Source: Octopus sinensis | Lineage: Eukaryota | Reading direction: 5' to 3' | DNA length: 64,000 nt | Assembly (NCBI RefSeq): GCF_006345805.1 | Contig: NC_042998.1 | Coordinates: forward strand, 868,001 to 932,000 | Part shown: piece by piece, positions 8,703-62,965 of the stretch | How the letters are laid out: each line of letters starts with the position of its first letter | How positions within the stretch are numbered: the stretch's first letter is position 1 | Notes under the pieces: generated by a model | The model's input: the letters and a program-made list of their open reading frames with translations, nothing else | Told to the model about the DNA's origin: nothing | Databases searched by the model: none | Translations under genes and position numbers: made by a program

Positions 8703-9876
8703 ATTTCGAACATAAATCAACATGGCGGAAGGTTTTAATTTAGAGCACTTTAAAGCAGGAATTGTGTATGATGAAAACAAAGGCGGTCTTGGGCAAGTCG
8801 ATATCGGAAGTGAGTTGATTTATATGTCATGCAAAGCAGCTTAAAAATGTTTATTTCTGGGGAGATATCTTAATGCCATTCTATAAGTGGATTCCTCATA
8901 ATGGTACCAAGTTGCTTTAGCACAGAACTACCAACAACTACCAACGTGCTCCAACTAAACCTGCATTAAATCATACCTGACCGTTTTAGAAAAAAAATGA
9001 ATGCATTAGATAACGTAGTTCCAGATGTCACCGTATCTAGGTGAAAAAAAGAGGATGGTCACGGTTGGGATGTTTCTGACTGTTAGTCTGAACTGCTCGA
9101 CTAAAGATGATCTGAATTTAAATGACAGTCGCGGCAAGAACAGCAGTTAGACAGATTTCTCGCGAGGCAGTTAAGATGGATGCCAAGATGCGTCGCACCA
9201 AGTAACACGAGCAAGCTTTTAGCTCAGACTACATATTTTTGAAGTGTCTGTCTCGCTCGTGCGCTCCTAACCGCTACTCTCATTATCAACGATTCCAAAA
9301 GAAATAGTATCAGCAGTGAAGTTTTCTCTTTCATTGTTCCGGACCGGGAAAAATATTCTTCAGATTACGATACTGTTATTGAAAAATATAAAGGAAAGAG
9401 CAAAAAAAAACTCTCACAAAACAAACTTATTTATAGAAATATTTCGTATATGTCTCTCTACGTCTAAGAACAATCTTTGGATATAAAGAATCTGAAATCA
9501 AAAGAACAAAAGAATGCCGTTTTCTAGCCATCACATTTCACGTGATCTTTCAAAATTCTCAAAGAACTTGGCTCCTGTGAAGATACTTTCCATAGTTTCC
9601 CCAACGTTCATTTATGGTTTTACAGCATCTAAATCTATTCTCCATGTATCTTCGTAATAAATTTGTTTGCATCTTCTTCATATATATAGTTCATTCGTCT
9701 TGAACTTTACATTTCACTACTTTATATTATTCCTCAATTTTTTCTTTTATTTGTGTTTTTCATTGTAACGTAATAACTTTGATTCTATTTATTCTTACCT
9801 TACAGTCGTCACACTTCTCTCCTTTTTACACTTTACTGCTTTATATCGTCTATATTCTTTCATTCCTTTATTATAT

Positions 9877-10190: not shown

Positions 10191-10322
10191 CCGTGGTATT
10201 ATATAGAGTATTATCTTCTGGAAAGCATATTCACAGTTTCGGATACACAGTCACTCACTCACACACATATACACACACGCACGCACACAAACACACATAC
10301 ACACACATACACTTTCTCTCTC

Positions 10323-11689
10323 TCTATGGTTGCTGTTTGACAACGGGGAAAAGGCTCTCCGGTTTGCGAATCAGCCTTTAGAAGGCAAGGAAATTCTGTT
10401 CCTTCCGTCATATTGTGGAAGAAAATTAATACGAGCCTGGGTATGTGGGTTATCCCCAGGCACCGAAGCGGATTGGATTGAAGATACCATGCGACGGGGA
10501 CTGGGGGATGGCGGGCCCAGGCTCTTAAATGTAAGGGTATTGCCGGCGGTCGATTGGGAAGGGTCAAAAGCGATTTTGACCCTGTGGACCCCATCGGCCG
10601 CAACAGATCTGGTTTTTCCAGATCTCTTGAAAATGGCTGGCTGCAGGTATCCGGTGATACTTGAGGGACGTCCCCCCAAGTGTCACTCGTGCCTGCAGCC
10701 AGGCCACATTAAAAGAAACTGCCCTCAGGACCATGGTAAGGTCATGGAACAGTCACTAGATGCCACTTCCCCTACCCGGTCAAAGGGAGAGGTGGATGTG
10801 GTCGAGGAGGCTTCAGCCTCCTCAACTAAAAAAGGATTAAAAAGGCAGAAGGCGGGCAACAATAGTTGCCCGCTGAAGGAACCTAAGGCTTCGGGAGGCG
10901 GGGGAGCGTCTCCGTACAAAGCGGAAGAGCTCCACTCTCCCGAAGTCAGAAAGAAAAGAAAAAAAGAAGGAAGAAGAACGGGTCATCTCAGCGGGGAGAT
11001 GATGTGCCGTCTGCATGTCCCGAAGTTATGCCACCCACGGTGGAAGAAACCACCCCACCCTTAAAGATGATCAATTAATTATCTTTTTCTACAAGGGCGG
11101 GGAGGTGGAAAAATAGTAGAAGAACATAAAGAGACAGCAGATATGCCCTTCACACGGGATCCCGAATGGCCTCCGCAGATAGCAGAGGAGGTCATAAGGT
11201 TTCCCTTGTGGGAAAGGCTTAAAGGATTTGGGAAGGAGTGTCGCAAATGGCCGGGTGGCCCTTACATGCCCTTACATGTCCTACATGAATGAGGCATGGG
11301 AAATGGCGGAATACAGGAACTCAAGCGGCATTGAAGATAATGATGAATATATCGATGGATGTATCGAAGAGTAGGAGGTGAAAGACCCTCGTTATAGGGT
11401 TTGAAACCTCAGCTTATTGTATTATTTGTAGTGGTTTATAACCTCAATTGTGTGTTTAAAAAAAAAACATGTTAAGTAAGAGGTTTTAGTGCTTCCTTCT
11501 TGTAAGAGGTTTGAAACATTGATTTTTTAAAAAAAGAAAATATGTTTTCGAGAAAAATCCAATCGGCGGGTGTTGGGTTTCGTCTCTCATTTATTCATTC
11601 TATTTCATTATCATTCATTAATGTGTTTGTCCGGCCCGCAAAGCTACACACTCTTTGTACTGTCTATGATGACAAATTTTATGAAATAA
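10323..11689 (+). mobile_element. ORF1-only L1/Tx1-like element, copy 1 (5'-truncated, type A)
   Basis: ORF 10330-11064 with KEILFLPSYCGRK and zinc knuckle CHSCLQPGHIKRNC; frameshifted C-terminus PFTRDPEWPPQIAEEV; TCATT-rich tail ending ATGAAATAA; no endonuclease or RT sequence follows. Confidence 0.8.
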
Positions 11690-11827
11690 AGTAGCTTGCT
11701 TACCAACCACATGGTTCCGGGTCCAGTCCCACTGGCGGCACCTTGGGCAAGTGTCTTCTACTATAGCCCCAGGCCGACCAAAGCTTTGTGAGTGGATTTG
11801 GTAGAGGGAAACTGAAAGAAGCCTGTC

Positions 11828-11889
<62 letters not shown>

Positions 11890-12090
11890 ATATATATATC
11901 TGTATATGTTTGTGTGTCTGTGTTTTCCCACCAGCATCGCTTGACAACAGATGCTGGTGTATTTACGCCCCCGTCACTTAGCGGTTCGGCAAGAGAATAA
12001 GTACTAAGCTTACAAAGAATACGTGCTGGGGTCGATTTGTTCGACTATAGGCGTGGCCGCAGTCAAACGACTGAAACAAATAAGAGAATA
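11689..12090 (+). mobile_element. OR-like CORE SINE missing its first ~20 nt
   Basis: Begins AAGTAGCTTGCTTACCAACCAC; CORE CACCTTGGGCAAGTGTCTT; (TA)n; tail. Confidence 0.9.
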
Positions 12091-12317
12091 TGTCCACAAT
12101 GGTAGAAATACAACAGGAAACATACGAGTACATGTATATGTCCGTAGAAAATTACTATATCTGTATATGGATAAAACTATTGGAGAGGAATCAATACCTT
12201 CGTATCTTTGCTTTCGGAAAGAATTCAGCTGAATCAGTTGCTATAAATTGGTGTGAAGATTTCACAGGAAGGCAATCAATTAATCAATCAATCAATCAAT
12301 TAATACATATATATATG

Positions 12318-13513
12318 TTCCGAAAGAACCAAAATGGATTCAGACATGGGCGCTCAACGCTGAGCCAGATACTATGCCTACGCAGACTTATTGAAGAATC
12401 AAAAGCATTTAATCGCGATCTTGCAATGGTATTTGTAGACTTTTCTAAAGCGTTCGATTCTGTAGATAGGTACAAGATGTTTGAAATCTTTAAGCTCTAT
12501 GGGATACCAGACAAGATCATTTCTGCCATTAAGGTCCTCTACACAGATACGTCTTCAACCATCTTAACCCCTGACGGAGAAACACCATCTTTCTCAATCA
12601 AAGCCGGAATACTGCAGGGAGACACACTCGCCCCATTTCTTTTCCTCATTGTTGTTGATTATGTGCTACGTATGTCAGCTGATACCATCTCTGGCAAGGG
12701 CTTTGAAATAAAACCAAGAAGAAGTTTCAGACACCCAGCTGAGTACTTGACAGACACTGACTTTGCTGACGACATCGCTCTTATCAGTGATTCTCTCTCC
12801 AATGCCCAGTCTCTTTTACAATCTCTTGAACAAGCCTCAAATTGTGTAGGTCTTTACCTCAATGAGGCCAAGACTGAATACATAAACAAGTGCCTGTCCA
12901 ACAGTGATTGCATCATCCACACTCTCAACAATGCGCCTTTAAATATGGTTTCTGATTACAAATATCTTGGGTCATACATATCATCATCTGGAAAAGACTT
13001 TCTAACTAGAAAGGGTATGGCCTGGTCAGCCTGTAATGACATGCATAAGATCTGGTCATCAAATCTAAGTAGAGACTTCAAACTTGAAATATTCAAAGCC
13101 ACAGTCGAACCAATTCTACTATATGGCTCAGAAACCTGGACGTTATCAAAGAAGCTTGAGAGGCGGTTGGATGGAACCTACACTCGCCTCCTTATTAGAG
13201 CTCAAAATCTCTCGTGGAAGCGCCATCCAACCAAAATGCAAATATATGGGAAACTACCACCTGTGACATCTCTTGTGAAAGGTAGGAGAGTCCATTGTTG
13301 TAGAGCTGAAAAAGAGGTAATTTCTACTCTTCTCTTCTGGAAGCCATCTACTCGCAATACCAGAGGGCGCACACTCTCCTACCCTGATGTAATCTCCAAG
13401 GATACAGGCATCCAGCAACAGGAGATCCGTAATGCCATGATAGACCGTGAAGTCAGGCGTAACATGGTAAATTCCATTGTCTCGACCACGGTCGAACAAT
13501 GATGATGATGATG
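12318..13513 (+). mobile_element. RTE-clade LINE, 5'-truncated, RT domain open to its stop codon (13502)
   Basis: QNGFRHGRST, FVDFSKAFDSV, GILQGDTLAPFLF, DFADDIAL, YKYLGS, LLYGSETW, DREVRR; short (TGA)n tail right after the stop. Confidence 0.95.
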
Positions 13514-15489: not shown

Positions 15490-15541
<52 letters not shown>

Positions 15542-15680
15542 ACTGGATTTTTTCAGTTTCTGTCTACGAAATCCCCTCACAAGGCTTTGGTCGGCCCGAG
15601 GATATCGCAGAAGACACTTGTCCAAGTTACCATGCAGTGGGACTGAACCTGGAACCGTGTGGTTTGGAAGCAAGCTTCTT
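14515..15680 (-). mobile_element. OR-like SINE split in its (TA)n by a duplicated SINE; its head is cut by ORF1-only copy 2, with the remainder at 18049-18088
   Basis: Tail 14515-14740, CORE/head 15535-15680, head remainder CTTACCACACAACCACTCCTGCGC at 18061. Confidence 0.85.
14833..15493 (-). mobile_element. Two tandem near-identical copies of a third tRNA SINE (period 363 bp)
   Basis: Head GAGGTTGTGAGCTCGAATCCCGG, CTTGAGCAAGGCACTT, CTCCAGTTCACTCAGCTG; units 14833-15130 and 15196-15493. Confidence 0.9.
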
Positions 15681-18048
15681 TATTTTATGAAATTGGCCAT
15701 GAAGGCCGGACATAGAGGAGACAGCACAAGGTGGGGACAAAAAATAAAACGGATAGAAAGAATGAATTAATATAATGAAAGATGAAATGAAACCGTTCCT
15801 CCCCACCTTCGAGCGACTTCATTGAACCAGTTGATACATTTTTTTAAACACTAGTTTATGACACAAATATTAGCGACAGATAATTATCATTCTTATGAAG
15901 GTTGTTTACATTGTGCTTCTTTGAAATATCGTAAACACTTATTTGCTTAGGCATTGAGCTACATCCACTTCTGGGGGGTATATCCTCCACCCTAACCCTG
16001 GAAGCACGTCTCTCAAAATATACAGATAGAAGAACCACTTTATCAGTTCTCAGCGATGTTGCTGAGTGCAGCCTGGCAGGAGCTACCTTCCAAAACCAAG
16101 ACAGAGACATTAATGAGATGAATGATGATGATATAAGGATGGGAGAAGACGAAAAGCGCCCGCCGACTTTCGCTTCTTTAAAACATTGTTCTTTTTTTCT
16201 TTTTTTTTTAAAACACAATGAGGCAATAAACCTCTTACACAGTTCAAAATTAAAAATAAAACACAAACACGAGGCAATAATCCTCTCACTTTTTACATTT
16301 TTAGTCTCTTTTTGAGGTAATACACCTCTTCTATTTTTCCGCCCGGCCAGGCTCCTCGCTTCATCGAAGCACCTGGTCCGTTCCGAACTTAAAGGTTTCA
16401 ACATATATCTGAAGGAGTCCTTCGGGAAGTAGTTCGTTATCCTACACAGATCGTTCTCCCATATGACCTCCGCAGCCACCTGCGAAGGCCACTCAGGGTC
16501 CTCCGTGTAGGACAGAAGCCCCTCCCACCGGCACTTCCTTTCAATCTTTTTGATTTTATTTTGCAAGGTTCCTCCCTTGTGGAAGAGGATCAAAAATTCC
16601 TCCTCCAGCGGCACACCCGCCAAAAGAGAATCGGGACACGTCGGCAGCGTGTCACAACCTGCTGGCAATGTCCCGTTTTTCTTTTTTCTTTTCTCTTTCC
16701 CTTGGGCTGCCGGAAGGTGGTGTTCCCTTGCTGTGTCCAGCAGGTCTTCCTTTTCTCCCGCAGCTCTAGGTTTCTCACCTTTCGCTTTCGGTTTTTCGAG
16801 GAGGTTTGCACCTCCTTGACATCCTCCTCCTTCTCTCCCTCCATTGAGGGAGCGGGGAGTGGTTCCCCTGTTAACTGCTCCAGGATCCTACTTTGGTCCT
16901 TGGGGAAGTTTTTCTTGATGTGGCCGGTCTCCAGGCACAGGTGACACTTGTGGGGGGGGGGCGTCCCTCGAGCATCACCGGATACCTAGACCCGGCCATC
17001 CTCAAAAAATCTGGGAAAACCAGACTTTCGGCTGATTGGGTCCATAGGGTCAACACAGCTTTTGACTCCTCCCAATCAGCCGCAGGCAAAATTTTTACGT
17101 TGAGCAGCTTGGTACTGCTACCACCCAGACCCCGGCGGATAGAGTCCTCTATCCACTCGGGCTCAATTCCGGGTGGCAAGCCGCAAACCCAAGCCCTCAT
17201 TAACTTCTTCCCACAATAACTGGGAAGAAACATTATTTCCTTCCCCTCGAGGGGCCGGCTTTCAAAATCGCAAGCTTCTTTGGGGAAGTCAAATAGCAAC
17301 CAGACCGTTGCAAATTTGACTCCCCGTGAAATAAATTTAATAGCTGGCATGTATTCTGCCAGCTCTTTCAAAATTGTGGCTTTCGGGAAGACGGTTATGG
17401 TATCGAGTGACTTTGAATAAGTCCTCAACACCACCGTCTTCCTTTCGAACTCTTTTAGCCATGATTTGGGAGGTGTTAATTCCCACACTAATATTTCCTT
17501 TGCCATTTTGTTTTAAATAAAAAGTTCAAATACAGTTCGTCAATACGTTTTCAAATAAAGAAAGATACACAAAAAAAGAAAGAAGACACAACAGAAGGGA
17601 AGAAAAAATAAAATTAACAGTTCAAATAAAGTTCTTTCTTTTTTTTTAAATAAATGATAGCTGTGAAAAGAGAGTTCAAATCCAGGCAAAGAAATAAATT
17701 TCCGGCCGAAAGGTGCTCCTGGCCAATCCTTTAAATCCACGTGGGCACAAACATTTTCAAATACAATTTCTCACAATTATGTGAGACAACACACACGTCT
17801 CCACAGCAAGGCAGACAAAAGGCCCCGAATCCAGTAAGGACTCCCTGCCTGTTCAAAAAAATTAAACCAACAGGCAACAAATCCTACCGGACTCACAAAG
17901 CAAAAAGTCTTACCTTACAGTAGAGCGTCTTTCAGTTCAACTTTTGCCAGCTGCATACCAGCGTGACGACTTCAACAGGTGCGTGAAGAATACTGTTTTT
18001 GTTCTTTTTAGGACGGAGCTCAAAGCTACACGTCCTCACTGTTCAACC
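15681..18048 (-). mobile_element. ORF1-only L1/Tx1-like element, copy 2 (full length, TSD-bounded, type A)
   Basis: 15-bp direct repeat GGAAGCAAGCTTCTT at 15666-15680 and 18049-18063; ORF1 from ATG 17506, frameshifted in a G run, knuckle CHLCLETGHIKKNF, YTEDPEWP motif; no ORF2. Confidence 0.88.
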
Positions 18049-18097
18049 GGAAGCAAGCTTCTTACCACACAACCACTCCTGCGCATATAATTACGAG

Positions 18098-26753: not shown

Positions 26754-26965
26754 GGAGGCAAGCTGCAGAAACGTTAGCATGCTGGGCGAAATGTTGGCGG
26801 TATTTCGTCTGTCTTTACGTTCTGAGTTCAAATTCCGCGCATGTTGACTTTGCCTCTCATCCTTTCGTAGTCTATAAATTAAGTACCAGTTGCGTACTGG
26901 GGTCGATCTAATCGACTGCGCCCCACCAAAGAAAGAAAAATTTCGGGCCTTATGTCTAGTGTAGA
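26754..26965 (+). mobile_element. OK-like SINE
   Basis: tRNA-like head, GTTCAAATTCC, GCCTCTCATCCTTTCG core. Confidence 0.85.
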
Positions 26966-27027
26966 AAGGAATACTTCTTTATTTATTTCAGAAACCTGTG
27001 ACACTGCAGTATGGTTAAAAAAGAAGA

Positions 27028-29620
27028 TTATTTTTACAGCCATGTGGTTCTTGGTGAATGGGGATATAAAACATAAAACGAATGAGAATGACATGTTATA
27101 TTTATATAACAATGAAATGTTATATAAAATTGAAATTGCTGCATGGGCCTGATTCCCATGCAGTAACATCTGAACGTTTATACACTCTATTTACAATCGT
27201 TCTATTTTTCTATTGCAATAATAATTCTCTAAAAGAGATATAGACAGTAACTGCTCGACAACATAAGGGACTAAAGCCATCTGAATATGGCTAGGGACAG
27301 GGCAGGGTGGTGGGGGTGTCACTGTTGCATTTAGCCCCAGGCGAACATCGACGTCACCAGAAAGGCCCGACACCGTCACGGTGTCCTTTAACCTGCAAAG
27401 GGAGGTAATTCCCCGATGAAGCGGAAACCACACACGGACCATGGTTTTAAGGTGTATTGCCTATCGTCGGCGTGTGGTAGGCTTCCGCTTCCTCGACGAA
27501 CTCTCACTCTGCAGGATATTCATATATAGATTTTCAAGCAAAATACATTTGCTGATTTCGAAAATCTGTTCGAAAGCAATAATAATTCTCTAAAAGAGAT
27601 ATAGACAGTAACTGCTCGACAACATAAGGGACTAAAGCCATCTGAATATGGCTAGGGACAGGGCAGGGTGGTGGGGGTGTTACTGTTGCATTTAGCCCCA
27701 GGCGAACATCGACGTCACCAGAAAGGCCCGACACCGTCACGCCGACGATAGGCAATACACCTTGAAACCATGGTCCGTGTGTGGTTTCCGCTTCATCGGG
27801 GAATTACCTCCCTTTGCAGGTTAAAGGACACCGTGACGGTGTCGGGCCTTTCTGGTGACGTCGATGTTCGCCTGGGGCTAAATGCAACAGTAACACCCCC
27901 ATCACCCTGCCCTGTCCCTAGCCATATTCAGATGGCTTTAGTCCCTTATGTTGTATTTTTCTATTGTTTTTTCTTAATCATCTTTTTTTCTCTTTTTTCT
28001 TTCCATTGAAACACTTTTACTTTTTTCTTTCAACAAAACAATTTTACTTACTCATTTTTTTTTCCATTTTAATACCTCATGAAAGGCTCCACGTCTCTGA
28101 GTTCAACTACGGGTGGCAGTTCATCGAACTCCACCAACACTCCGGCCGGGTCAATCTTGTTTCTGCACATGTCTCTCAGTCTCTTGTATGTGTCTTTGTC
28201 GACTACAATGGCCTTTACATTTTCGGAATATATATCCGTGGGTAACCTTACCCTTATGATATGCTTAAATTTTACAATTTTTCTTTCCGTCTCTTTGTTT
28301 TTTTACATATGTTACAAAGTTCCATTTATTTTTTCCTTTCCTTGGTTTTCTCTTTTCTACTTCCGGTTCCTTTTCTATCTCCACTCTGAACAATTTCTCC
28401 ATTTCACCCTCGTACAGTTGTACTCCTGAATCTTTCTCCCTCGCTGAAATAACACTGTTTCCTCCTTCTGTAACTCATTCTCGCACACTTTTCCAATTAC
28501 TTTTTCACTTTCTTTCTCCATCACCATTTTGTCTTCTTTCCTTCTGGTCGCATCTTTCATTTCCACCTCTTCTTTCTTCTTTTTCTGGTTACCAGGCCGG
28601 GGGGGGGCTCCCTCTTCCACTTCTTTTTCTTTCCACCACCGTAAATCCTTCCTCCATTGTTTTCTCTTCCATCTCTACCTGTACTACCTGTTCTCTACTT
28701 TCCTGTTTCTCCTTCTGTTCTCTCTGTGGGCACCTCGCCTTCATGTGGCCTTTCTCCCCACATGCAAAACATACAGGCGGCCTGCCCTCCACCACCACCA
28801 CCACCACCACTCTCAATCTCAAGTCGTCGGGTAGCACTATCTCCTCAGCAATCCGATTTAAGTCTTCTATTGTTGCCTGGATAGTGAGCTCGATCCCGTA
28901 TCCCCAGTAGTTGATTCTATTTGTCCTTATGGCCTTCAATATGTTGGCCCCATCCTTCATGTTGAACATTATGGTTGTCATCAGCCATGCTTCTTCTTGT
29001 TCTGGGAGTACTTTACCTACTCGCACTCTGGCCACACGTTTGCCACATTACGACGGCAAAAGTACCCACTCCTCCGATCTTATTGTCTCTTCCTCTGTCG
29101 CAAAGCGCACCTCCATGGTGGCATACTTCCTTCTTCTTGTTATATAAATTGTTAATGTTTTAATGCTTTTCAATACCTCTTCGATTTCCTCCACTGTCGC
29201 AATCTCTATCTTTCTCATTCCTATTTTCATTGTTTTATACGTAACTCTTCGTCCCGTTACACTGTTTGTCAGCTCTGCAGGTGGCGTCAACTTCAACGTC
29301 TCTCCATCCTTCTCCAGCAACTTTTCACATCCCTTCATTTTCCTTGGTTCGACCTTAATCGCAATTATCTCCAACGTTTTCTCTTCAGATCCTTTTCCAG
29401 TTAAGGACGCCCGCAGGTGTTTTCTCCATTTTTCTTTCAATGGCAAAAAAATTAAACAACAACAATTAACAACATCAACAATCAAACAGCAATAAACGAA
29501 CAATTATTTAACTCTTTTACTCATAGAAAACACTCCGTCATCAACGACTCAACTCCAAATATAATACTGTCAACTACTCTCCGACTCTGCTACTACTTAC
29601 CTCCAACAATGACTGTCTCA
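27028..29620 (-). mobile_element. ORF1-only L1/Tx1-like element, copy 3 (type B), with an insertion in its 3' UTR
   Basis: Frameshifted ORF1 from ATG ~29429: KYATMEVRF, VLLPS*CGKRVARVRV, knuckle CFACGEKGHMKARC, acidic/basic C-terminus ending ...VEPFMRY*; family tail ~27028-27130; no ORF2. Confidence 0.8.
27216..27953. mobile_element. TSD-bounded direct+inverted composite of an RTE-like 3' end
   Basis: A 27215-27474 (+), B 27576-27741 (+, partial), C 27738-27954 (inverted A); 13-bp flanking repeat TATTTTTCTATTG; translation LLDNIRD*SHLNMARDRAGW resembles an RTE C-terminus. Confidence 0.75.
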
Positions 29621-29729
29621 ATTTATAGTGGCTAATTCATACCACCTGGCCACGTGGGAAGGAATGTACCGTTTTCACTACAACATACACATACACACAC
29701 ACACACATATATAGTACAAATTTACAGAA

Positions 29730-40390: not shown

Positions 40391-40473
<83 letters not shown>
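40296..40473. repeat. (TAA)n immediately followed by (TTA)n
   Basis: Direct inspection. Confidence 0.95.
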
Positions 40474-40479
<6 letters not shown>

Positions 40480-40704
40480 CCGTATGAGCGGGATGGGCTA
40501 CTCGACCTGAAGAAAATTCTAACTAGGCCCCACCCACAAGGTCATGCGCTGTTTATCTTGATATGAGATCACCATGTCACGCACATATGGTTGTGAAGCA
40601 TGTGCCTGGTGTACCCTTATCAGACGGGTAGTCATGATGGGTATACTGGGCTTCGTATATTTAACCCCAGTGTCACTTTGATGGCATGCACTGCTCTCTC
40701 ACTC
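40474..40704 (+). mobile_element. Truncated copy of the TAA-associated non-coding element (see 61480-62034)
   Basis: Reverse complement of ~61480-61710; ends CTCTCACTC-AATAAAAATAAT. Confidence 0.85.
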
Positions 40705-41214
40705 AATAAAAATAATGTGTATGTATGTATTGATGACTATATAATTTTGCTTGTGATCACAAAACATAACGCCAATGATGAATATATATCTTTCAGTTTT
40801 CATCTTTTACTTCTTAGAGCCATTTTGATTGCGGTCGTGCTGGGGCATCTCCTTGAAGGCTTTAGACGAGCAAATCGACCCCAGTGCCAATTTTTAAAAG
40901 TCCAGTTCTTATTTTACTGGTTACCTTTGCCGAACTGCAAAGTTATGACGGCATAAACAAATCAAATACTTGCTCAGTGGACCTCATTCAGAAACCATGT
41001 TTTGGGGAAGAGACACTTCTTATTACACAGACATGCCTACGGATGACACACACACAAACACACAGATTGATTGAGTGATAGATAGATGGAAAATTTTATC
41101 GTCACTAAATGTGCTTGGGGGTGCCAAAGTACCTATATTACTAGAAATAAGAGTTAAATACTCTTAAAGTTGTAAGAAGAGCGCATTAAGAGTCTCTGAC
41201 TCATATTTTTAGCA

Positions 41215-41435: not shown

Positions 41436-41862
41436 GTGTTTATCCCCCGTACCGCTTGAGAGCTGGTGTTTATGCGTCATGCCGAAAAAATTTAAGTACT
41501 GGTGTCGAGTCGTTCGACTAAAATACTTCTAGTGCCCCAGCATGGCCGCAGTCTTGTGACTGAAACATGTAAAAGACAAAGGATATAATGTCGCTGAGTT
41601 TCGCCCATGCGCCAACAATGACTGGCCTTCTTTTCATTTCTTTTTATCTGCCATAGGGAATCTCTTTTACTCTTTTACTTGTTTCAGTCATTTGACTGCG
41701 GCCATGCTGGAGCACCACCTTTAGTCGAGCAAATCGACCCCAGGACTTATTATCTGTAAGCCTAGTACTTATTCTATCGGTCTCTCATGCCGAACTGCTA
41801 AGTTATGAGGACGTAAACACACCAGCAACGGTGGTCAAGCGGTGTTGGGGGGACAAACACAG

Positions 41863-41917
<55 letters not shown>

Positions 41918-42058
41918 CAACGGGCTTCTTTCAGTTTTCGTCTACCAAATCCACTCACAAGGCTATAGTAGAAGACACTTGCCCGAAGTGCCACGCAGTG
42001 GGACTGAACCCGGAAGCATGTGATTGGTAAGCAAGCTACTTACCACACAGCCACTCCT
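41215..42058. mobile_element. Two OR-like SINEs in tail-to-tail inverted orientation (41215-41580 +, 41650-42058 -)
   Basis: Heads, CORE, microsatellite and tails recognisable in both. Confidence 0.88.
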
Positions 42059-49522: not shown

Positions 49523-51600
49523 TTATTTCTTTATTGCCCACACGGGGCCAATATAGAGGTGACAGTACAAGGACAGACAAAAAACCCAAGGATGGGGACA
49601 AAAAATTCGAATGAAAAGGATGAATTAAATAATCAAATGAAAAATGGAATGAAGCCACTCGACCCCACATCCAGATGACTTCATTTATCTTTGACTAGCA
49701 GTATCGCCCGGCGTTGCTCGGGTTTGTAAGGGAAATAACTATATAAGCATTTTTAGAGATGTAAAGTATAATAGCCATCTCAATATAGCTAACCACAAAG
49801 GGGGGGGGGTTACTCTAGCTTTTTACGTTCTGAGATTTAATAATAAATTTTTAGAGAGTTACTTCCCTTATATATGCCAAAAATGCATTAAAAATGGGAA
49901 AAATTTATGGTAATTTTTTTTTTAATTGTAGACTCATCGTAGACGCGCGCTAATACCCAGAAGGGCTCGATATGAATCACGACTATAAGATACCCGGTTT
50001 TGGTTAAACTGCACCGCAAAATGTGGGAGTAAGGAATCTAAATCGTAGGAGACAGAAACCACACAACCTCACTTTTATATATAAAGATAAACACGACAAT
50101 TTACTTATTTTACTTATTATAAAACATTTTAAAATCTTATTCACCACATAAAATGTCTATATTAAAGTCTTTAAGAAGTTCTTTGTAACCTACTGTTGTT
50201 GGTATATACCTGGTATCGATTTTCTTTCGCCAGTGAAAAACATTGTTCCCGTATTCTTCCAGTTCTGATGTGTATCTGGGGTCTACTATCACACAGTCAT
50301 AGTGCGAGGGCACTTCCCCACACTCTACAATGATTACCTTTATCTACTCTTCCCACCTGTCTAACCCCTTAGATAGCTTAGCATGTTTTGCATTGTAAAT
50401 CACTATACTTTTTTTCACAGGTTGGGGCTTGGGAAATTTGGGGCTCTTGTGTGCTTGTGGTTAATTTGTCAGTGTAAGGTGGGGGTAGGGTGAGGGTTAG
50501 TGTCTGTAGGGAAAGGGTGGAGCAGTGTGGGTCTGGGTGGGAGTCGGATGGGTGTGAGATGGGGATTATCGTTCACTGATTGTACTTTTTCTCCTCTTTC
50601 TGCTCTTCTTTCCTGCAGTTTCCCATTCGTCTTTGGTTTTATTTTTTCCTTTTTCCCCTGTGCTGATCTCTCTTCCGTTAGTTCTTGCCGGCGGTGGAGG
50701 TGCAGTTTCTTTTACGATCACGGGTACCTCTTGTGACTTTATGGGCGGTGGAGGACATTCCGCTCTAATGTGCTCTTTTTGGCCACATATGTAACAACGA
50801 GGGATACTGACCACCACTCTAACACCGAGTATTACATCTTTGAATGTAATGATCTCGACCATATTTTCCAGGTCTTCCAGGGTGGCCTAGACTACCATAT
50901 CCAGGCTCTGCCCTTGCGAATTTTTATGTGCAGTGCTGGTGGCTTGGAGGCCCAGCAGTATAGCAGTTACTAGCTTCTATGTCTTCTACCCCTTCCCTGG
51001 AAGTACGTCTTCCAAGGTATATGGGCAGAAGTAACACCTCATCAGATTTTAACGGGGTAGCCTGGCAGTAGCTTCATCTCGGAACCGCACCTCCACCGTT
51101 CCGAACTTTCTTCCTCTGCCAGATGGGTTTTAACGCCTTTTCAATTTGAATTGTAGTCATTAATTCGATTTTCTTGGTTTTGACAGAGTAAGTTCTATAG
51201 ATTATCATCTTTCCTTTGGTTGGTTTTCTGTAATAACTTCTCGGGGAGGGGACACCTTTACGTCTTGCCCCTACCTACGAAGCATATTCTTGCATTTACC
51301 TAGTTCCTTTGCATCAATTTGTTCGTTGTGGCTTTTGACCACGGCCGCAAAATTCATTCTTTCTTCTTTTTTGTCTATCACAGAAATTGTTTTCAGCAAT
51401 TCTTCCTCGGAAGAACTCAGATTGTCATACTCCATTTTTTAACGCTGTGCTACCCCCTTCAAACAAGGGGGAAGGCGTCAACAAAACTGTCGTAAGGCAG
51501 CAAAACAAAGTGTTGTTCAACACAAAATAATTAGAATAAACAGCCATTCAACAGTGCAACAATTAATTTAACAGTGACTTACTACAAATATGTATTTTAA
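49523..51600 (-). mobile_element. ORF1-only L1/Tx1-like element, copy 4 (type B), Helitron inserted in the 3' UTR
   Basis: Decayed ORF1 from ATG 51435: IYRTYS, KFGTVEVRF, LKSDEVLLLPIYLGRR, knuckle CYICGQKEHIRAEC; TCATT-rich tail 49523-49690; no ORF2. Confidence 0.8.
49695..50087 (-). mobile_element. Non-autonomous Helitron (internally shorter relative of 34913-35449)
   Basis: Minus strand A|TCTTTATATATAAAA ... CCCGAGCAACGCCGGGCGATACTGCTAG|T. Confidence 0.9.
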
Positions 51601-53374: not shown

Positions 53375-54310
53375 GGCGCACGGCTTAGTGGTTAGGTTTG
53401 ATTTACAATCATAAGGTTGTGAGTTCGATTCATGGAGGTGCGTTGTGACATTGAGTAAGACACTATGTTTCACGTTGGTCCAGTCCACTCGGCTGGCAAA
53501 AATAAGTTGTACCTGTAATTGAAAAAGGCCGGCCTTGTAACATGCAGTGCCACGCCGAACCTTCTTGAAAACTATGCTAAAGGTACTTATCTTTTTATTG
53601 CCCACAAGGGGCTAAACACAGAGGGGACAAACAAGGGCAGACAAACGGATTAAGTCGATTACATCGACCTCAGTGCGTAACTGGTACTTAATTTATCGAC
53701 CCCGAAAGGATGAAAGGCAAAGTCGACCTCGGCGGAATTTGAACTCAGAATGTAACGGCAGACGAAATACCAATTTCTTTACTACCCACAAGAGGCTAAA
53801 CACAGAGAGGACAAACAAGGACAGACAAACGGATTAAGTCGATTATATCGACCCCAGTGCGTAACTGGTACTTATTTAATCGACCCCGAAAAGATGAAAG
53901 GCAAAGTCGACCTCGGCGGAATTTGAACTCAGAATGTAACGGCAGACGAAATACCAATTTCTTTACTACCCACAAGAGGCTAAACACAGAGGGGACAAAC
54001 AAGGACAGACAAACGGATTAAGTCGATTATATCGACCCCAGTGCGCAACTGGTACTTATTTAATCGACCCCGAAAAGATGAAAGGCAAAGTCGACCTCGG
54101 CGGAATTTGAACTCAGAATGTAACGGCAGACGAAATACGGCTACACATTTCGCCCGTCGTGCTAACGTTTCTGCCAGCTCGCCGCCTAAACTATGCTAAA
54201 CGTACGCGTGTCTGTGGAGTGTTCACCCACTTGCACGTTAATTTCACATGCAGGTTGTAACGTTGATCGGATCAACTAGAGTACTCTTCGTCGTAACCTA
54301 CGGAGTGCCA
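53375..54310 (+). mobile_element. tRNA SINE interrupted by an OK-like SINE trimer
   Basis: Head AGGCGCACGGCTTAGTGGTTAGG, GAGTTCGATTC; continues after 54188 with GTGTCTGTGGAGTG. Confidence 0.85.
53587..54187 (-). mobile_element. Head-to-tail trimer of the young OK-like SINE (period 184 bp)
   Basis: Three cores; flanked by AAACTATGCTAAA(G/C)GTAC at 53569-53586 and 54188-54205. Confidence 0.92.
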
Positions 54311-54689
54311 AGTTATAATGCAAAGTTGCAGCTGTCTTCCAGTTTGCATCTCCTCCATCAACCAAGGGGCCAAACCAAGCATCACCTGTCTACATAAATC
54401 GTCATGCTGGCAGCGATGTATGCCGGAGATACATAGAAAAGGATCAGAAATATCAATATATTGACCAGCTAGAAATAGCAGTCAAATTTCCCTCAAATCG
54501 CGCCGTACAATCGCAAAAGAAAAACAAAACAAAACAAAAATAACTAGGACACATTAGGAAATTTATTCCTAGATATTCCTAGACAGACGTGAGGTTGTGA
54601 CTGGAATACTTTTGTCGATAGATTTTCTCGGTTAGGGTTGACAAAATGAAAGGTCAACAACCAGAATACCCGAGTAAGATTAGTTTATA

Positions 54690-54920
54690 TTTCTTTACTA
54701 CCCACAAGGGGATAAACACAGAGGGGACAAACAAGGACAGACAAACGGATTAAGTCGAATACATCGACCCCAGTGCGTAACTGGTACTTAATTTATTGAC
54801 CCCGAAAGGATGAAAGGCAAAGTCGACCTCGGCGGAATTTGAACTCAGAACGTAGCGGCAGACGAAATAGGGCTACGCATTTCGCCCGGCATGCTAACGC
54901 TTCTGCCAGCACGCTGCCTT
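54690..54920 (-). mobile_element. Young OK-like SINE, full length
   Basis: High identity to 6186-6418. Confidence 0.92.
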
Positions 54921-55439
54921 ATACTCGAGTAAGATTAGCATAGTGATGCATTAGTACACACAACAGTTTAATATAAATGCCTTGTCACAGATATTCATAC
55001 AACAGTATAGTTGTAGCAGCAGCAGCGACACCATAATGTTATCGAAGGTTTTGATGAGCTTCAGATGATTTGGTTGTTTCTTGATTATATTCAATAATAA
55101 AACAATAGAAAGGCCGCCGCCAAGCCGTCTCGGAATCCACTCTTTTTCTCATCTGGATTTACTATACGTACCTATCTTCCTGTATTGCAGTATCTAGTCG
55201 TAGGATCATTATGTAATTAACCGATGAGTCATAAATGTCAATACAGTAGGGCTTAATTTGATGACTCACCATTACTGACTAGCAGATTTACTACACAATC
55301 AGTAGACGAGGGTGTTGTAAAGAAGGGAAAAGTGGAATATCCATCCGGAATAAATTACCAACATAAAAATATTTACTTTATAACACGAATCTTTAAACCC
55401 AAGGAATGTCTGAAATGAAATCAAATAACAACAACCAAT

Positions 55440-56462
55440 TTTATTCTTTTCTACTCTAGGCTCAGGGCCCGACTATTTTTGAAAAAATTTTGGGGGGCAG
55501 TCGATTATATCGACCCAGTGCGTAACTGGTACTTAATTATTCGACCCGGAAAGGATGAAAGGCAAAGTCGACCTCGGCGAAATTTGAACTCAGAACATAA
55601 AGACGAAATACCTATTTCTTTACTACCCACAAGGGGCTAAACACAGAGGGGACAAACAAGGACAGACAAACGGATTAAGTCGCTTACATCGACCCCAGTG
55701 CGTAACTGGTACTTATTTAATCGACCCCGAAAGGATGAAGGGCACAGTCGACCTCGGCGGAATTTGAACTCAGAACGTAGCGGCAGACGAAATACCTATT
55801 TCTTTACAACCCACAAGAGGCTAAACACACAGGGTGCAAACAAGGACAGACAAACGGATTAAGCCGATTATAGCGACTCCAGTGCCTAACTGGTACTTAT
55901 TTAATCGGTAATTAAGGCGGTTAGCTGGCAGAAACTTTAGCACGCCAGGCGAAATGCGTAGCCCTATTTCGTCTGTCGCTACGTTCTGAATTCAAATTCC
56001 GCCGAGGTCGACTTTGCCATTCATCCTTTCGGGGTCGATAAATCAAGTACCAGTTACGCACTGGGGTCGATATAATCGACTTAATCCGTTTGTCTGTCCT
56101 TGTTTGTCCTTTCTGTGTTTAGTCCCCTGTGGGTAGTAAAGAAATAGTACTTAATCGACCTCGAAAGGATGAAAGGCAAAGTCGACCTCGGCAGAATTTG
56201 AACTCAGAACTTAGTGGCAGACGAAATACCAATTTCTTTAATTCTCACAAGGGGCTAAACAGAGAGAGGACAAACAAGGACAGACAAACGGATTAAGTCG
56301 ATTATATCGACCCCAGTGCGTAACTGGTACTTATTTAATCCACCCCGAAAGGATGAAAGGCAAAGTCGACCTCGGTGGAATTTGAACTCAGAATGTAACG
56401 GCAGAAGAAATACCGCTAAGCATTTCGCCCAGCATATTAACGTTTCTGCCAGCTTGCCGCCT
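55440..56462. mobile_element. Cluster of OK-like SINEs: minus-strand units 55440-55905, plus copy 55915-56147, minus units 56148-56462
   Basis: Repeated cores in both orientations. Confidence 0.92.
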
Positions 56463-56699
56463 TTAAAATTACAAATGCCTATTATGCGAGAAAGAGATTC
56501 GTTTTTGTAGGAGATGAATAATTAAATCTGTTACAACTCTGAAAGAACTATTGTTAGGCGTCCTACCAATTCACCGTTCTGGAATGGTACGGTTCTTTTT
56601 TTATGAGTTCGAAAGAATGAAAGCTAAAGGGATTTGAATTTAGATTACAGAGATCAGGTACAAGTAACAAAAAGTATCGTCTCTGACGACTTAACAACT

Positions 56700-57924: not shown

Positions 57925-58630
57925 GATAAACTTAGATATGTTTCGACCAGAGATTGGTCCAGGCCATGTCTAACTTAATAGCACCACCTGATAGGATTAT
58001 TCGAATCCTGTTTAAGTCAAGTTTTGTTCAAGTAGTGAGTTCTTATTGGGTGAGTTGTATCCAGTTTTGTTCAAGTAGTGAGTTCTTGTTGGGTGAGTTG
58101 TATCCAATTATGGGTGGCTTATCTGGTATTCTTTGAAGGAATCTATCCAGACTCTGTTTGAAGTTGATGGGATCCTTTTCCTCTTTGATCTCCCTCGGGA
58201 CAATGTTAAATAGGGCAGGGCCTGTTGAGGAAAAGAAATTATGTTGCAGTGTACATGTATGTTGTGATCTTGAATTTGGCAGGGGACGTATAGCCCGTGG
58301 TCCAAGTCTTGGATGAACCTTGAAGCTAATGTTTAGGTAGTTTGGGCAAAGTTGGCGGTATATTTTCCACATCGTACAAATGATGTACCGCTCACGGCGA
58401 CGCTGGAGGGAGTAAAGTTTCAAGACTTTAAGGCGATCCCAATAATCGAGAGCAGCCATGCCTTCAATTTGTTTAGTGAGAGCCCTCTGGGGTGACTCAA
58501 TTCTGGAGATGTTTTGTCTTGTGTGAGGAGACCACAGTGGGCAGCAGTATTCAAGGTGTGGCCGTACAAAGGAGGAAAAAAGTGGTATGATGACACCTTG
58601 TTCTCTGGACCGGAAAGTTCTTAAGATCCA
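57925..58630 (-). mobile_element. CR1-group LINE 3' end
   Basis: WILRTFRSR..LFSSFVRPHLEYCCPLWSP..LKLYSLQRRRERY..FKQSLDRFL; terminal (ATCTAAGTTT)2; 43-bp tandem duplication at 58021-58106. Confidence 0.9.
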
Positions 58631-58648
58631 GGAACTCATCCTACGATA

Positions 58649-58685
<37 letters not shown>

Positions 58686-58846
58686 CGGAATCTTATATAT
58701 ATGTGTGCATATATGTGTGTGTGCATGTATGTGTGCATATATGTATGTGTGCATGTATATATATATATGTGTGTGTGTGAGTGTGTGTATGTGTGCGTTT
58801 CTTTGTGCACTTGTATATTTGAAACGTGCGTTCGTACATAAAATAA

Positions 58847-60165: not shown

Positions 60166-61479
60166 GAGAAACGCGTCTACACTTCTGTATAATTGCAATG
60201 TCATCTCTGTCTTCTTAACTCTCTCTCTTTCCTTCGCTCTCTCTTTCCCCCTCTCTCTTTCCTTCGCTTCCCCTCTCTCCCCCTCTCTCCATATATGTCC
60301 TCATCTCTCTCTCTTTTAAGTCTGCAATCTACTTCCAGACCATACATATCCCTTTAACACCCATTTTTCTCTAACGTAGGGAGCACACCCGCAGACTTAC
60401 TTCCGGTAAACGACAAATCCTGTTGACATATATTAATGTTATTTTATTTTATTCTTATTTCGCTGGTGTATTTTCACAGCAGTCTGTCCCATTCCTAAAC
60501 TCTCAAATAGCTCCCTAAACTTTACAGAATACACTTAGACTCCTTTATGTGTTACCCACTCCCTTCTTCATAGTGACTTTACACATTAATAACCAGGTCT
60601 CCGTGTTTTATATGTTTCTTACACGGAGAGGAAAACACACCCTCCTTTTGCAACTATAGATTTGACAAATGCACCGATTCTCCAAATAGTAAGGCTGCGT
60701 ATACGATGTTAACGTTTGAGTGGCATAGACAAGCTTTTATCCTTGAAAGTTTAGGCTGTTTCTATTTATATGAGCAATTCAGATTTGTCCTTTTAAAGAG
60801 AGAATACAACTTAATATATGATGGTTGTGGAGATTTCTGGGACAGTAAAAAACTAAATCGATTAATGATTTTAGTTTTTTTCCCGTTCAAATCCTGGTTC
60901 AAATATTACCGAAGTCGTCTATCTTAATATTAGTGTAATGAAATACATCTACCCTCGTTGATTAGTGATTCATTCATCACTTATCCAGGTAAAACGTCTA
61001 ATTGTAAATCGTGTTACGCTTATCATAAATTGAATTGTGATTACACGGATCGGTTGTCAGTTAAAGATTCTGCTTGGATCGCAAACGCACTTCCAAGCGA
61101 CCATTTACAATTCTTAAGACAACTTCGGGCCTCGGAACAAGACCTATTTTCTTATATATTTCATTATTAATTTATTACTGATTCATTTAACATGGTGTTA
61201 TTGCGACCAAATTCCCGTGATAAACGAGGATAGATCTCTTTGTAAGTCAAGCACTAGACTGAGGTTAAATTCCATGAAGTATTTTTTAAAACCTGAAATC
61301 ATACTCAGAAACAAATAATAACATCCACGCTAACTGAAATCAATCTAATCGAAGCACAACAATGACTGATAATCGAATGGCGATGTCCTTAAAGTATGAG
61401 GCAAGTTCCTAGTGCGCACAATCTAAGATTTAATTTGAATTCATAGATGAAATTGTTTCACTTCAAAGATATTATTATT

Positions 61480-62034
61480 GAGTGAGAGAGCAGTGCATGC
61501 CATCAAAGTGACACTGGGGTAAAATATACGAAGCCCACTATACCCATCATGACTACCCGTCTGATAAGGGTACACCAGGCACATGCATCACAACCATATG
61601 TGTGTGACATGGTGATCTCATATCAAGATAAATAGCACATGACCTTGCAGGTGGGGCCCAGTTAGAATTTTCTTCTTGTTGAGTAGCCCATCCTACTCAA
61701 AAGGTCCCTAAATAAGGATTGTTTAAGGATGTTGAACGAAACAGTCATGTTTCCAGAGGCGAATTATTAAAACTCCCTAGAATTCCTCTCAACACATGGC
61801 TATGACGCTCTCCCACTACTTCTGCTCGTGATCAGAGATGCACATATTGTGAATCACTAAGGGACATGCTCAAGTGGTTAAGATCAAACAACTGACAAGC
61901 AAATCAGTGACACTGACAGAATATTTGTTGTAGCCATCTTTTATACCAAGATAAAACAATGTACATGATAACACTACCAATCAGTTAAGATGAGAAGCCA
62001 TGAGAGCCACTGCTAGGTACTGCATCAGGGCAGT
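61480..62034 (-). mobile_element. ~555-bp non-coding element flanked by (TTA)n on both sides
   Basis: Second copy at 40474-40704; no ORF and no tRNA head seen. Confidence 0.75.
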
Positions 62035-62052
62035 ATTTTTTATTATTATTTA

Positions 62053-62114
<62 letters not shown>

Positions 62115-62142
62115 ATTATTATTATTATTGTTATTATTATTC

Positions 62143-62191
<49 letters not shown>

Positions 62192-62192
<1 letters not shown>

Positions 62193-62943: not shown

Positions 62944-62965
62944 TTATTATTATTATTATTATTAT

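What the first reader, a model, noticed from the sequence alone, without database searches (positions are those of the whole stretch)
15681..18048. A family of ORF1-only (half-LINE) retroelements that moved as a unit
Four copies (10323-11689, 15681-18048, ~27028-29620, ~49523-51600) encode a gag-like L1/Tx1-type ORF1 (RTYS..KFATV...LLPSYCG..RVRV region, then one CX2CX4HX4C knuckle and a low-complexity charged C-terminus). Each runs straight into a related TCATT-rich tail ending AAATAA, with no endonuclease or RT. Copy 2 is bounded by a perfect 15-bp TSD, so a 2.37-kb ORF2-less unit retrotransposed intact. ORF1-only HAL1 elements are known elsewhere, but two diverged subfamilies with four copies in 64 kb suggest a large, old, non-autonomous lineage that keeps supplying its own RNA-binding protein. 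All copies here are frameshifted.
Basis: partly seen in the sequence, partly recalled or inferred. Interest (0 to 1): 0.8.

Follow-up and report, generated by a model that had tools for sequence, protein, structure and literature searches.

The report
ORF1-only LINE relics in octopus
Four decayed copies of an octopus jumping gene keep only the RNA-binding first gene of a LINE element and lack the copying enzyme; they match known "half-LINE" parasites, but three independent copies sit at the same spot inside a short repeat (SINE).

Summary
Four defective ORF1-only elements lie at 10323-11689 (+), 15681-18048 (-), about 26983-29660 (-) and 49523 to about 51597 (-). Each has a related TCATT-rich, non-poly(A) tail ending AAATAA. 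None has room for, or similarity to, an endonuclease or RT. Copy 2 has a perfect 15-bp TSD.

New points:
1. Pfam recognises only the CCHC knuckle, yet the protein belongs to a large octopod family (394 cluster representatives). In one relative (L002) it is followed by an APE endonuclease, so it is a LINE ORF1.
2. It probably has two RRM-like domains, a knuckle, a basic linker and a conserved C-terminal domain.
3. dN/dS between copies is 0.11-0.25. Copies 1 and 2 are collinear from ORF1 into the 3' UTR, so the ORF2-less state is old and ORF1 was under selection.
4. Copy 2 is a chimera of two subfamilies within one TSD.
5. The TSD is positions 22-36 of a SINE I read as tRNA-derived. Copy 1 and an O. 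sinensis copy have junctions at the same SINE position, which suggests target preference.

The partner LINE, genome-wide counts and catalogue status could not be checked. Verdict: a new member of a known kind (like HAL1 and HeT-A), of moderate interest.

The parts
15681..18048 (-). Copy 2: complete 2.37-kb ORF1-only unit. It is a chimera of two subfamilies bounded by one TSD.
15666..15680 (.). TSD copy at the 3' side of copy 2 (GGAAGCAAGCTTCTT on the + strand). Equals SINE-A positions 22-36.
18049..18063 (.). TSD copy at the 5' side of copy 2.
18049..18084 (-). Head of the SINE-A copy that was split by copy 2 (SINE-A positions 1-36).
15537..15680 (-). Body of the same SINE-A copy (positions 22-166), followed by its (TA)n.
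17507..18048 (-). Copy 2 5' UTR. Alignable with the 5' UTR of the O. sinensis copy in L001 (76% over aligned columns).
16349..17506 (-). Copy 2 ORF1: two RRM-like domains, a CCHC knuckle (last Cys is Phe), a basic linker and a C-terminal domain. Frameshifts near 16945 (G run) and near 16790. The 3' limit is approximate.
16100..16348 (-). Copy 2 inner 3' UTR and copy-1-type TCATT tail. It lacks the last 58 nt of that tail.
15940..16110 (-). Second ORF1 fragment of the copy-4 subfamily (..VVLLSVYFERRASRVRVEDIPP..), joined to the inner tail with no TSD between them.
15681..15830 (-). Terminal TCATT-rich tail of copy 2 (copy-4 type), ending AAATAA(A).
10323..11689 (+). Copy 1: 5'-truncated, same subfamily as the main part of copy 2. 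ORF1 is open to 11064 with an intact CCHC; the C-terminal domain is frameshifted. Tail at 11540-11689.
11689..11827 (+). SINE-A body starting at SINE position 22, directly after copy 1. This is the same junction as in copy 2.
26983..29660 (-). Copy 3: a separate lineage (27% aa identity to copy 2). ORF1 at about 28589-29335 has an in-frame TAA and frameshifts. A C-terminal domain remnant lies near 28100-28300. A 0.7-kb rearranged block sits at 27258-27954. Both ends are approximate.
49523..51597 (-). Copy 4: a third lineage, heavily decayed. The CCHC is at about 50770-50810, the tail at 49523-49690, and an unrelated insert at about 49685-50080. The 5' end is approximate.

Best explanation
These are non-autonomous, ORF1-only derivatives of a LINE, living in an octopus genome.

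Structure. A full unit is about 1.9-2.4 kb. It has a 0.3-0.5 kb 5' UTR, then one ORF of about 400-450 aa, then a roughly 0.3-kb 3' UTR. The ORF encodes two RRM-like domains, one CCHC knuckle, a basic linker and a conserved C-terminal domain. The 3' UTR ends in a conserved TCATT-rich tail with a terminal AATAAA and no A-run.

Inferred mechanism. The RNA is probably bound by its own ORF1 protein. A reverse transcriptase and endonuclease supplied in trans by an autonomous relative then copies it into the genome by target-primed reverse transcription. That relative is probably of the L1/Tx1 kind and recognises the conserved tail.

Shown here:
- The ORF2-less structure.
- The 15-bp TSD and the rebuilt empty site of copy 2.
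- Purifying selection on ORF1 between lineages.
- Linkage of this ORF1 family to an endonuclease ORF in one relative.

Additional findings:
- Copy 2 arose from two templates. The most likely route is that the RT started on a copy-4-type RNA and switched to a copy-1-type RNA 58 nt from its 3' end. The result was inserted as one piece.
- Integration is not random. Three independent elements are joined to the same position (22-36) of a SINE I read as tRNA-derived. The cause could be a sequence-selective partner, or annealing of read-through 3' flank RNA to the nicked target. Both causes are inferred.
For: - TSD and empty site.
- No endonuclease or RT, and too little space for them: plus the sequence lengths.
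- Family size and taxonomy.
- ORF1 followed by an APE endonuclease in L002. Its nearest solved relatives are L1 endonucleases only.
- Knuckle: Pfam zf-CCHC in 12 of 18 members.
- Tandem beta-alpha-beta-beta-alpha-beta units, with every top Foldseek hit a two-RRM protein.
- dN/dS of 0.11-0.25.
- Copies 1 and 2 collinear through ORF1, C-terminal domain, 3' UTR and tail.
- Tails related across lineages whose proteins are only 25-30% identical.
- Same SINE junction in copy 1 (3' side), copy 2 (both sides) and the O. sinensis copy in L001 (5' side).
- The SINE flanks belong to different SINE subtypes. Copy 1's flank is closest (91.7%) to an ordinary uninterrupted SINE copy, not to copy 2's flank (82.6%).
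Against: - No partner LINE with this tail is in the window. The RTE-like, Dong-like and CR1/L2-like fragments end in different tails.
- The link to ORF2 rests on one 2.2-kb contig of unknown species with a degenerate endonuclease.
- The RRM assignment rests on a low-confidence model (pLDDT 55; Foldseek E >= 3e-3, TM 0.25-0.41).
- Target preference rests on three elements. Copies 3 and 4 are not in SINE-A and have no significant TSD.
- The 5'-truncated copy 1 lacks the expected SINE head upstream.
- Only five octopus copies were inspected, so ORF2-bearing copies could be common elsewhere in the genome.
Confidence: 0.7

Rival explanations
1. The copies are sporadic, independent ORF2-deletion products of several ordinary autonomous LINE families, not a self-propagating ORF1-only lineage.
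For: An autonomous relative with ORF1 followed by an endonuclease exists. HAL1 is reported to have arisen several times from L1 (PMC5753468). The low dN/dS could reflect selection acting in autonomous masters.
Against: None of the four window copies has ORF2, and the O. sinensis copy, which is cut off within its C-terminal domain region, shows none either. Copies 1 and 2 have saturated synonymous divergence yet share the same collinear ORF1, C-terminal domain, 3' UTR and tail. Copy 2 moved without an ORF2.
Confidence: 0.12
2. The sequence is a host gene family: a domesticated ORF1 or ZCCHC3-like RNA-binding protein. The window copies are its processed pseudogenes.
For: Relatives are annotated as octopus proteins (LOC115225585 and others). 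Pairwise dN/dS is below 1. The 5' UTR has a conserved splice-donor-like motif.
Against: There is no poly(A) tail. A conserved non-coding 3' tail is shared by lineages whose proteins are only 25-30% identical. The same integration site recurs. The family spans hundreds of 50%-identity clusters. Every copy inspected is defective, including P0001, whose knuckle has Phe in place of the first Cys and which stops early compared with the other copies. An endonuclease ORF follows the gene in a relative.
Confidence: 0.08
3. One ancient insertion into a SINE-A copy created a composite (SINE head, then element, then SINE body). That composite then spread as a unit by way of the SINE tail, so the shared junction is inherited and is not a targeting preference.
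For: Three elements share the junction. The 5'-truncated copy 1 has no SINE head upstream, as a truncated composite would predict.
Against: Copy 2's two 15-mers are identical and both carry that SINE copy's own variants (A..C), whereas copy 1 and L001 carry other variants. The SINE flanks of copies 1 and 2 are not each other's closest relatives. Internal repeats as old as the divergence between the elements (dS about 1-2) should have decayed.
Confidence: 0.05

Closest known systems
HAL1 (half-L1) of mammals
   Same: A non-autonomous LINE derivative that keeps only ORF1, lacks ORF2, is dispersed, and is mobilised in trans (PMC5753468).
   Different: HAL1 carries the L1 type II ORF1 (Transposase_22) and a poly(A) tail. 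The octopus elements have a knuckle-bearing ORF1 that Pfam does not recognise, a conserved non-poly(A) tail, and an apparent preferred target.
HeT-A of Drosophila telomeres (from my own knowledge, not tested here)
   Same: A gag/ORF1-only non-LTR element with CCHC knuckles. It depends on another element's RT and integrates at a particular kind of site.
   Different: HeT-A belongs to the Jockey clade, forms telomeric arrays, and has host-beneficial status. The octopus copies are interstitial, decayed, and inserted in a SINE.
Tx1-clade LINEs (Tx1L, Keno, Kibi, Koshi, Tx1-Mar)
   Same: Type I ORF1 (RRM plus CCHC), and a preference for specific repeated targets, including other transposons (PMC4494074; PMC5203782). 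The endonuclease of the related contig L002 is closest to L1-group endonucleases.
   Different: Tx1 elements are autonomous, with ORF2. No RT is available here to place the partner in a clade, and the tail is not poly(A).
Chimeric retrocopies made by LINE RT template switching, such as U6/L1 chimeras (from my own knowledge)
   Same: Copy 2 joins two different templates inside one TSD, and the upstream template is missing its own 3' end.
   Different: Both templates in copy 2 are members of the same ORF1-only superfamily.

Membership tests
HAL1-type ORF1-only LINE derivative (architecture) | Encodes ORF1 and lacks endonuclease and RT | tested here: met
   Only 0.3-1.1 kb lies between ORF1 and the 3' end in each copy. 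There is no endonuclease hit and no Pfam hit in copy 2's 3' ORF.
HAL1-type ORF1-only LINE derivative (architecture) | Retrotransposed as such, flanked by a TSD | tested here: met
   Copy 2 has a perfect 15-bp TSD, and its empty site rebuilds an intact SINE. The candidate TSDs of copies 3 and 4 are not significant.
HAL1 proper (L1-derived) | L1 type II ORF1 (Transposase_22) and a poly(A) tail | tested here: not met
   No Pfam match other than zf-CCHC. The 3' ends read AAATAA with no A-run.
Type I LINE ORF1p (RRM plus CCHC) | CCHC zinc knuckle | tested here: met
   Pfam zf-CCHC in 12 of 18 family members. The motif is intact in copies 1, 3 and 4.
Type I LINE ORF1p (RRM plus CCHC) | RRM fold upstream of the knuckle | tested here: inconclusive
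The AF2 model of P0019 has pLDDT 55 and two beta-alpha-beta-beta-alpha-beta units. The top Foldseek hits are all tandem-RRM proteins, but with E >= 3e-3 and TM 0.25-0.41.
Type I LINE ORF1p (RRM plus CCHC) | Sits upstream of an endonuclease-RT ORF2 in autonomous elements | tested here: met
   In L002, P0019 (positions 18-683) is followed from about position 1385 by an APE endonuclease (Exo_endo_phos E = 6.4e-8). This is one contig only, and the RT is beyond the contig end.
Tx1 clade | RT phylogeny places the element or its partner in the Tx1 clade | not testable with these tools
   No RT belonging to this family is available. The endonuclease of L002 matches only L1 endonucleases among solved structures.
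Tx1 clade | Preference for a specific repeated target | tested here: inconclusive
   Three independent elements share SINE-A positions 22-36. Copies 3 and 4 lie elsewhere.
   No such hit at E <= 1 for the window proteins or for 18 family members.
Processed pseudogene of a host gene | Poly(A) tail, and a 3' end set by mRNA cleavage | tested here: not met
   There is no A-run. The tail is conserved among lineages whose proteins are 25-30% identical.

The most novel reading that the evidence does not exclude
An ancient, self-perpetuating ORF1-only retroelement superfamily of octopods has kept its own RNA-binding protein under selection with no RT of its own. It homes to one 15-bp site inside a tRNA-derived SINE, making it a sequence-targeted parasite of a parasite. 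The homing may be guided by read-through of its terminal AATAAA into the flanking SINE, so that the RNA carries the address of its next target.
Probability: 0.25. Interest if true: 0.65.

Novelty: new member of a known kind. Interest (0 to 1): 0.42.

Why it matters
Cephalopod genomes are roughly half repeats, and much of that is unclassified. If ORF1-only LINE derivatives form a large, old lineage under selection there, then the HAL1 and HeT-A strategy has arisen again, this time in molluscs. That strategy is to keep the RNA chaperone and borrow the polymerase. It would also give a name to many octopus gene models now annotated as "uncharacterized CCHC-type protein". A reproducible insertion site inside an abundant SINE would add a tractable case of target choice by a non-autonomous element. 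The chimeric copy 2 would stand as a natural record of RT template switching.

Tried and rejected
- Pfam on the copy 2 ORFs found nothing.
- Three word-indexed homolog searches returned only P0001 and P0019.
I rebuilt it from exact window ORFs.
- The AF2 model of P0001 was unusable, with pLDDT 37.
- A PDB sequence search found only the knuckle.
- A metagenome scan for distant relatives, made to find further ORF1-ORF2 linkages, found none.
- Exact look-ups of window ORFs, made to identify the source assembly, found nothing. The species within Octopus therefore stays unknown.
- ARAGORN calls no tRNA in the window, so "tRNA-derived" for SINE-A is my reading of its box-A-like and box-B-like motifs.
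- The candidate TSDs for copies 3 and 4 are no better than shuffles.
- I considered the RT ORF just downstream of copy 1 (12090-13502) as its ORF2 and rejected it. It is a 5'-truncated RTE-like element, separated from copy 1 by a SINE and a microsatellite, and it has a different tail.
- I rejected a nested-insertion explanation for copy 2. The upstream module lacks its own 3' end, and there is no internal TSD.
- The extra hits in L001 were C2H2 zinc-finger genes, matched through a chimeric gene model.

Full report
**What is there.**
The window is octopus DNA. The only named relatives of its ORF1-like proteins are octopod proteins, and it is full of (TA)n and (GATA)n microsatellites and SINEs.

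The 15-bp repeat GGAAGCAAGCTTCTT is exact at 15666-15680 and 18049-18063, and it bounds 15681-18048.

tblastn with 150 family proteins finds ORF1-like coding sequence at four places and no others:
- 10291-10941 (+)
- 16687-17509 (-), with an additional fragment at 15940-16110 (-)
- 28072-29425 (-)
- 50572-51397 (-)

All are defective, through frameshifts, in-frame stops or 5' truncation. Their last 150 nt or so are related TCATT-rich sequences ending AAATAA with no A-run. Alignment scores against shuffles give z = 4.4 to 17 for five of the six pairs; c1-c3 is not significant.

**No ORF2.**
Only about 0.3 kb (copy 1), 0.66 kb (copy 2), about 1.1 kb (copy 3, of which 0.7 kb is a recent rearranged block) and 0.6 kb (copy 4, of which 0.4 kb is an unrelated insert) lie between ORF1 and the 3' end. 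An endonuclease from a related element finds nothing in the window. Pfam finds nothing in the long 3' ORF of copy 2.

The RT ORF just downstream of copy 1 (12090-13502) is a separate, 5'-truncated RTE-like element. A SINE and a microsatellite lie between it and copy 1, and its tail is (TGA)n.

**What the protein is.**
Pfam sees only a zinc knuckle, and the PDB sequence search likewise. A profile built from exact window ORFs plus P0001 finds 394 cluster representatives at E <= 1e-3, of which 84 are at E <= 1e-10. Every named one I looked up comes from Octopus bimaculoides, O. vulgaris, O. sinensis or Argonauta hians, labelled "uncharacterized" or "CCHC-type domain-containing". None of the long relatives carries an endonuclease or RT domain.

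The link to LINEs comes from contig L002 (Logan run SRR11869394, species unknown). There the relative P0019 occupies positions 18-683. A stretch resembling the family's C-terminal domain follows. From about position 1385 there is a degenerate APE endonuclease (..LNIACLNVRSLKS..ET..DDFNAILD..SYIDRI..). Pfam scores it as Exo_endo_phos at E = 6.4e-8, and its only solved relatives are L1 endonucleases at E = 4e-7. The family is therefore a LINE ORF1, tentatively of the L1/Tx1 group.

An AlphaFold model of P0019 is weak (pLDDT 55). It shows two beta-alpha-beta-beta-alpha-beta units before the knuckle, and all top Foldseek hits are two-RRM proteins such as Sxl, HuR, NONO and UP1, at E >= 3e-3. This agrees with a type I ORF1p as defined in the literature (PMC5203782), but it does not prove it.

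Alignment of the stitched translations and of long relatives shows that the charged region is a linker. It is followed by a conserved C-terminal domain, seen in ..FFHKGG....DPEWP.Q[VI]A.EV.. and ..Y..LK..FP.DVG...

**An old ORF1-only lineage.**
Copies 1 and 2 are collinear from ORF1 through the C-terminal domain, the 3' UTR and the tail. Nei-Gojobori estimates are:

| Pair | dN/dS | dS |
|---|---|---|
| copy 2 vs L001 | 0.18 | 0.88 |
| copy 1 vs L001 | 0.25 | 1.0 |
| copy 1 vs copy 2 | 0.11 | about 2, saturated |

I infer that the ORF2-less architecture predates the split of these lineages, and that ORF1 was under purifying selection while they diverged. Copies 3 and 4 are 25-29% identical in protein to the others but have the same architecture and a related tail.

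**Copy 2 is a chimera.**
Element positions 1 to about 1949 are a copy-1-type element. That module's own tail stops 58 nt short of its end. Positions 1951-2070 then align with the copy-4 ORF1 at about positions 512-620, and positions 2226-2322 align with the copy-4 tail. There is no TSD at the internal junction.

The upstream module lacks its 3' end, which target-primed insertion does not produce, so a nested insertion is unlikely. The simplest reading is template switching (or an earlier recombination), followed by insertion of the whole 2.37 kb within a single TSD.

**Where it inserted.**
The flanks of copy 2 are the two halves of a SINE I call SINE-A, and the TSD equals SINE-A positions 22-36. 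I read SINE-A's head as tRNA-like, although ARAGORN calls no tRNA. Its body ends in (TA)n. About seven copies lie in the window. The rebuilt empty site aligns with uninterrupted copies.

Copy 1 is followed by SINE-A starting at position 22. In L001, the O. sinensis copy encoding P0001 is about 75% identical in DNA to copy 2, and it starts immediately after SINE-A position 36.

With roughly one SINE-A copy per 9 kb, two further hits on the same base by chance have a probability of about 1e-7. That figure is my own estimate.

The alternative is that one SINE-borne composite spread as a unit. Two results argue against it:
- The TSD variants track each SINE copy's own subtype.
- Copy 1's SINE flank is 91.7% identical to an ordinary SINE-A copy but only 82.6% identical to copy 2's flank.

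Some doubts remain. Copy 1 has no SINE head upstream. Copies 3 and 4 are not in SINE-A, and their candidate TSDs are no better than shuffles.

**How it probably works (inferred).**
The element is transcribed from its 5' UTR. The 5' UTRs of copy 2 and L001 are 76% alike over aligned columns and share conserved blocks. Its ORF1 protein coats the RNA. A partner LINE's ORF2 protein recognises the conserved tail and performs target-primed reverse transcription.

The terminal AATAAA spans the junction in copies 1-3. Transcripts may therefore extend into the downstream SINE, and annealing of that read-through flank to nicked SINE-A copies could explain the recurring site. Alternatively, the partner's endonuclease may be sequence-selective, as in many Tx1-clade elements (PMC4494074). 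No partner is present in the window: the RTE-like, Dong-like and CR1/L2-like fragments end in different tails. RTE and Dong elements are the LINEs so far described in octopus (PMC9115989).

**Comparison and verdict.**
In architecture this matches HAL1 (ORF1-only half-L1, which arose several times; PMC5753468) and Drosophila HeT-A. It is not HAL1 itself, because the ORF1 type is different and there is no poly(A).

It is best filed as a new member of a known kind. Three features would interest transposon specialists if they hold genome-wide: a conserved stringent-type tail, a two-template chimera, and an apparent preferred site inside a SINE.

I could not check copy numbers, the partner LINE, or Repbase and Dfam.

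Noticed in passing
window 11689-12090; also 41700-42058 (-): SINE-A seems to be a longer composite: a head and body of about 166 nt, an internal (TA)n, then a 3' module of about 190 nt containing GGGTCGATTTG.TCGAC and ending ..GACTGAAACAA.TAAGAGAAT. The 17-mer occurs 12 times in the window against 0 expected, partly within a second SINE family.
   Followed up: partly
window 12090-13502 (+): An uninterrupted 470-aa RT ORF (Pfam RVT_1 E = 3e-22) of a 5'-truncated RTE-like LINE. It ends in (TGA)n, then AAATAA and (TA)n, and it starts exactly at the end of the SINE 3' module.
   Followed up: partly
window 62040-63900 (-): Two tandem 3' portions of LINEs with a zf-RVT motif plus a conserved C-terminal domain. 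Each ends in (TAA)n, as if inserted one after the other into a TAA microsatellite, in the manner of Dong.
   Followed up: partly
window 57950-58810 (-): A 5'-truncated LINE C-terminal ORF (255 aa, no Pfam hit) that looks like CR1/L2. It ends in a duplicated ATCTAAGTTT unit.
   Followed up: no
window 27258-27954 (inside copy 3): An inverted repeat with 217-nt arms that are 99% complementary, separated by a 263-nt spacer, plus a further direct copy of part of it. This is a recent foldback-like rearrangement or insertion in the 3' region of copy 3.
   Followed up: no
window 49685-50080 (inside copy 4): A block of about 400 bp, unrelated to the family, interrupts copy 4 between its C-terminal domain remnant and its tail. 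It is bordered by short inverted matches (TTTATCTTT and AAAGATAAA) rather than a direct TSD.
   Followed up: no
window 53576-56518: A second SINE-like family (..GGAATTTGAACTCAGAAC..) forms head-to-tail copies at 184-bp spacing, with inverted copies nearby. This is an array rather than dispersed insertions. A copy also abuts the 3' end of copy 3 at about 26800-26980.
   Followed up: no
window ~17905-17925 (-); L001 ~9575-9595: A conserved splice-donor-like motif (ACTGTAAG|GTARG) lies in the 5' UTR of copy 2 and of the O. sinensis copy. In L001 a pyrimidine tract plus AG sits just before the ATG. This could be a retained 5' UTR intron or a regulatory block.
   Followed up: no
proteins P0109, P0020 (profile hits): Some database proteins fuse an ORF1 fragment to C2H2 zinc-finger arrays or to WD40 repeats. 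These are probably gene-model chimeras caused by these elements lying in or near host genes. L001 has the P0001 copy inside the span of a larger called gene.
   Followed up: partly
window 40469-40714 and 61470-61715: A 246-nt inverted repeat pair, 93% complementary and 20.7 kb apart. It is probably two copies of another dispersed repeat in opposite orientation.
   Followed up: no
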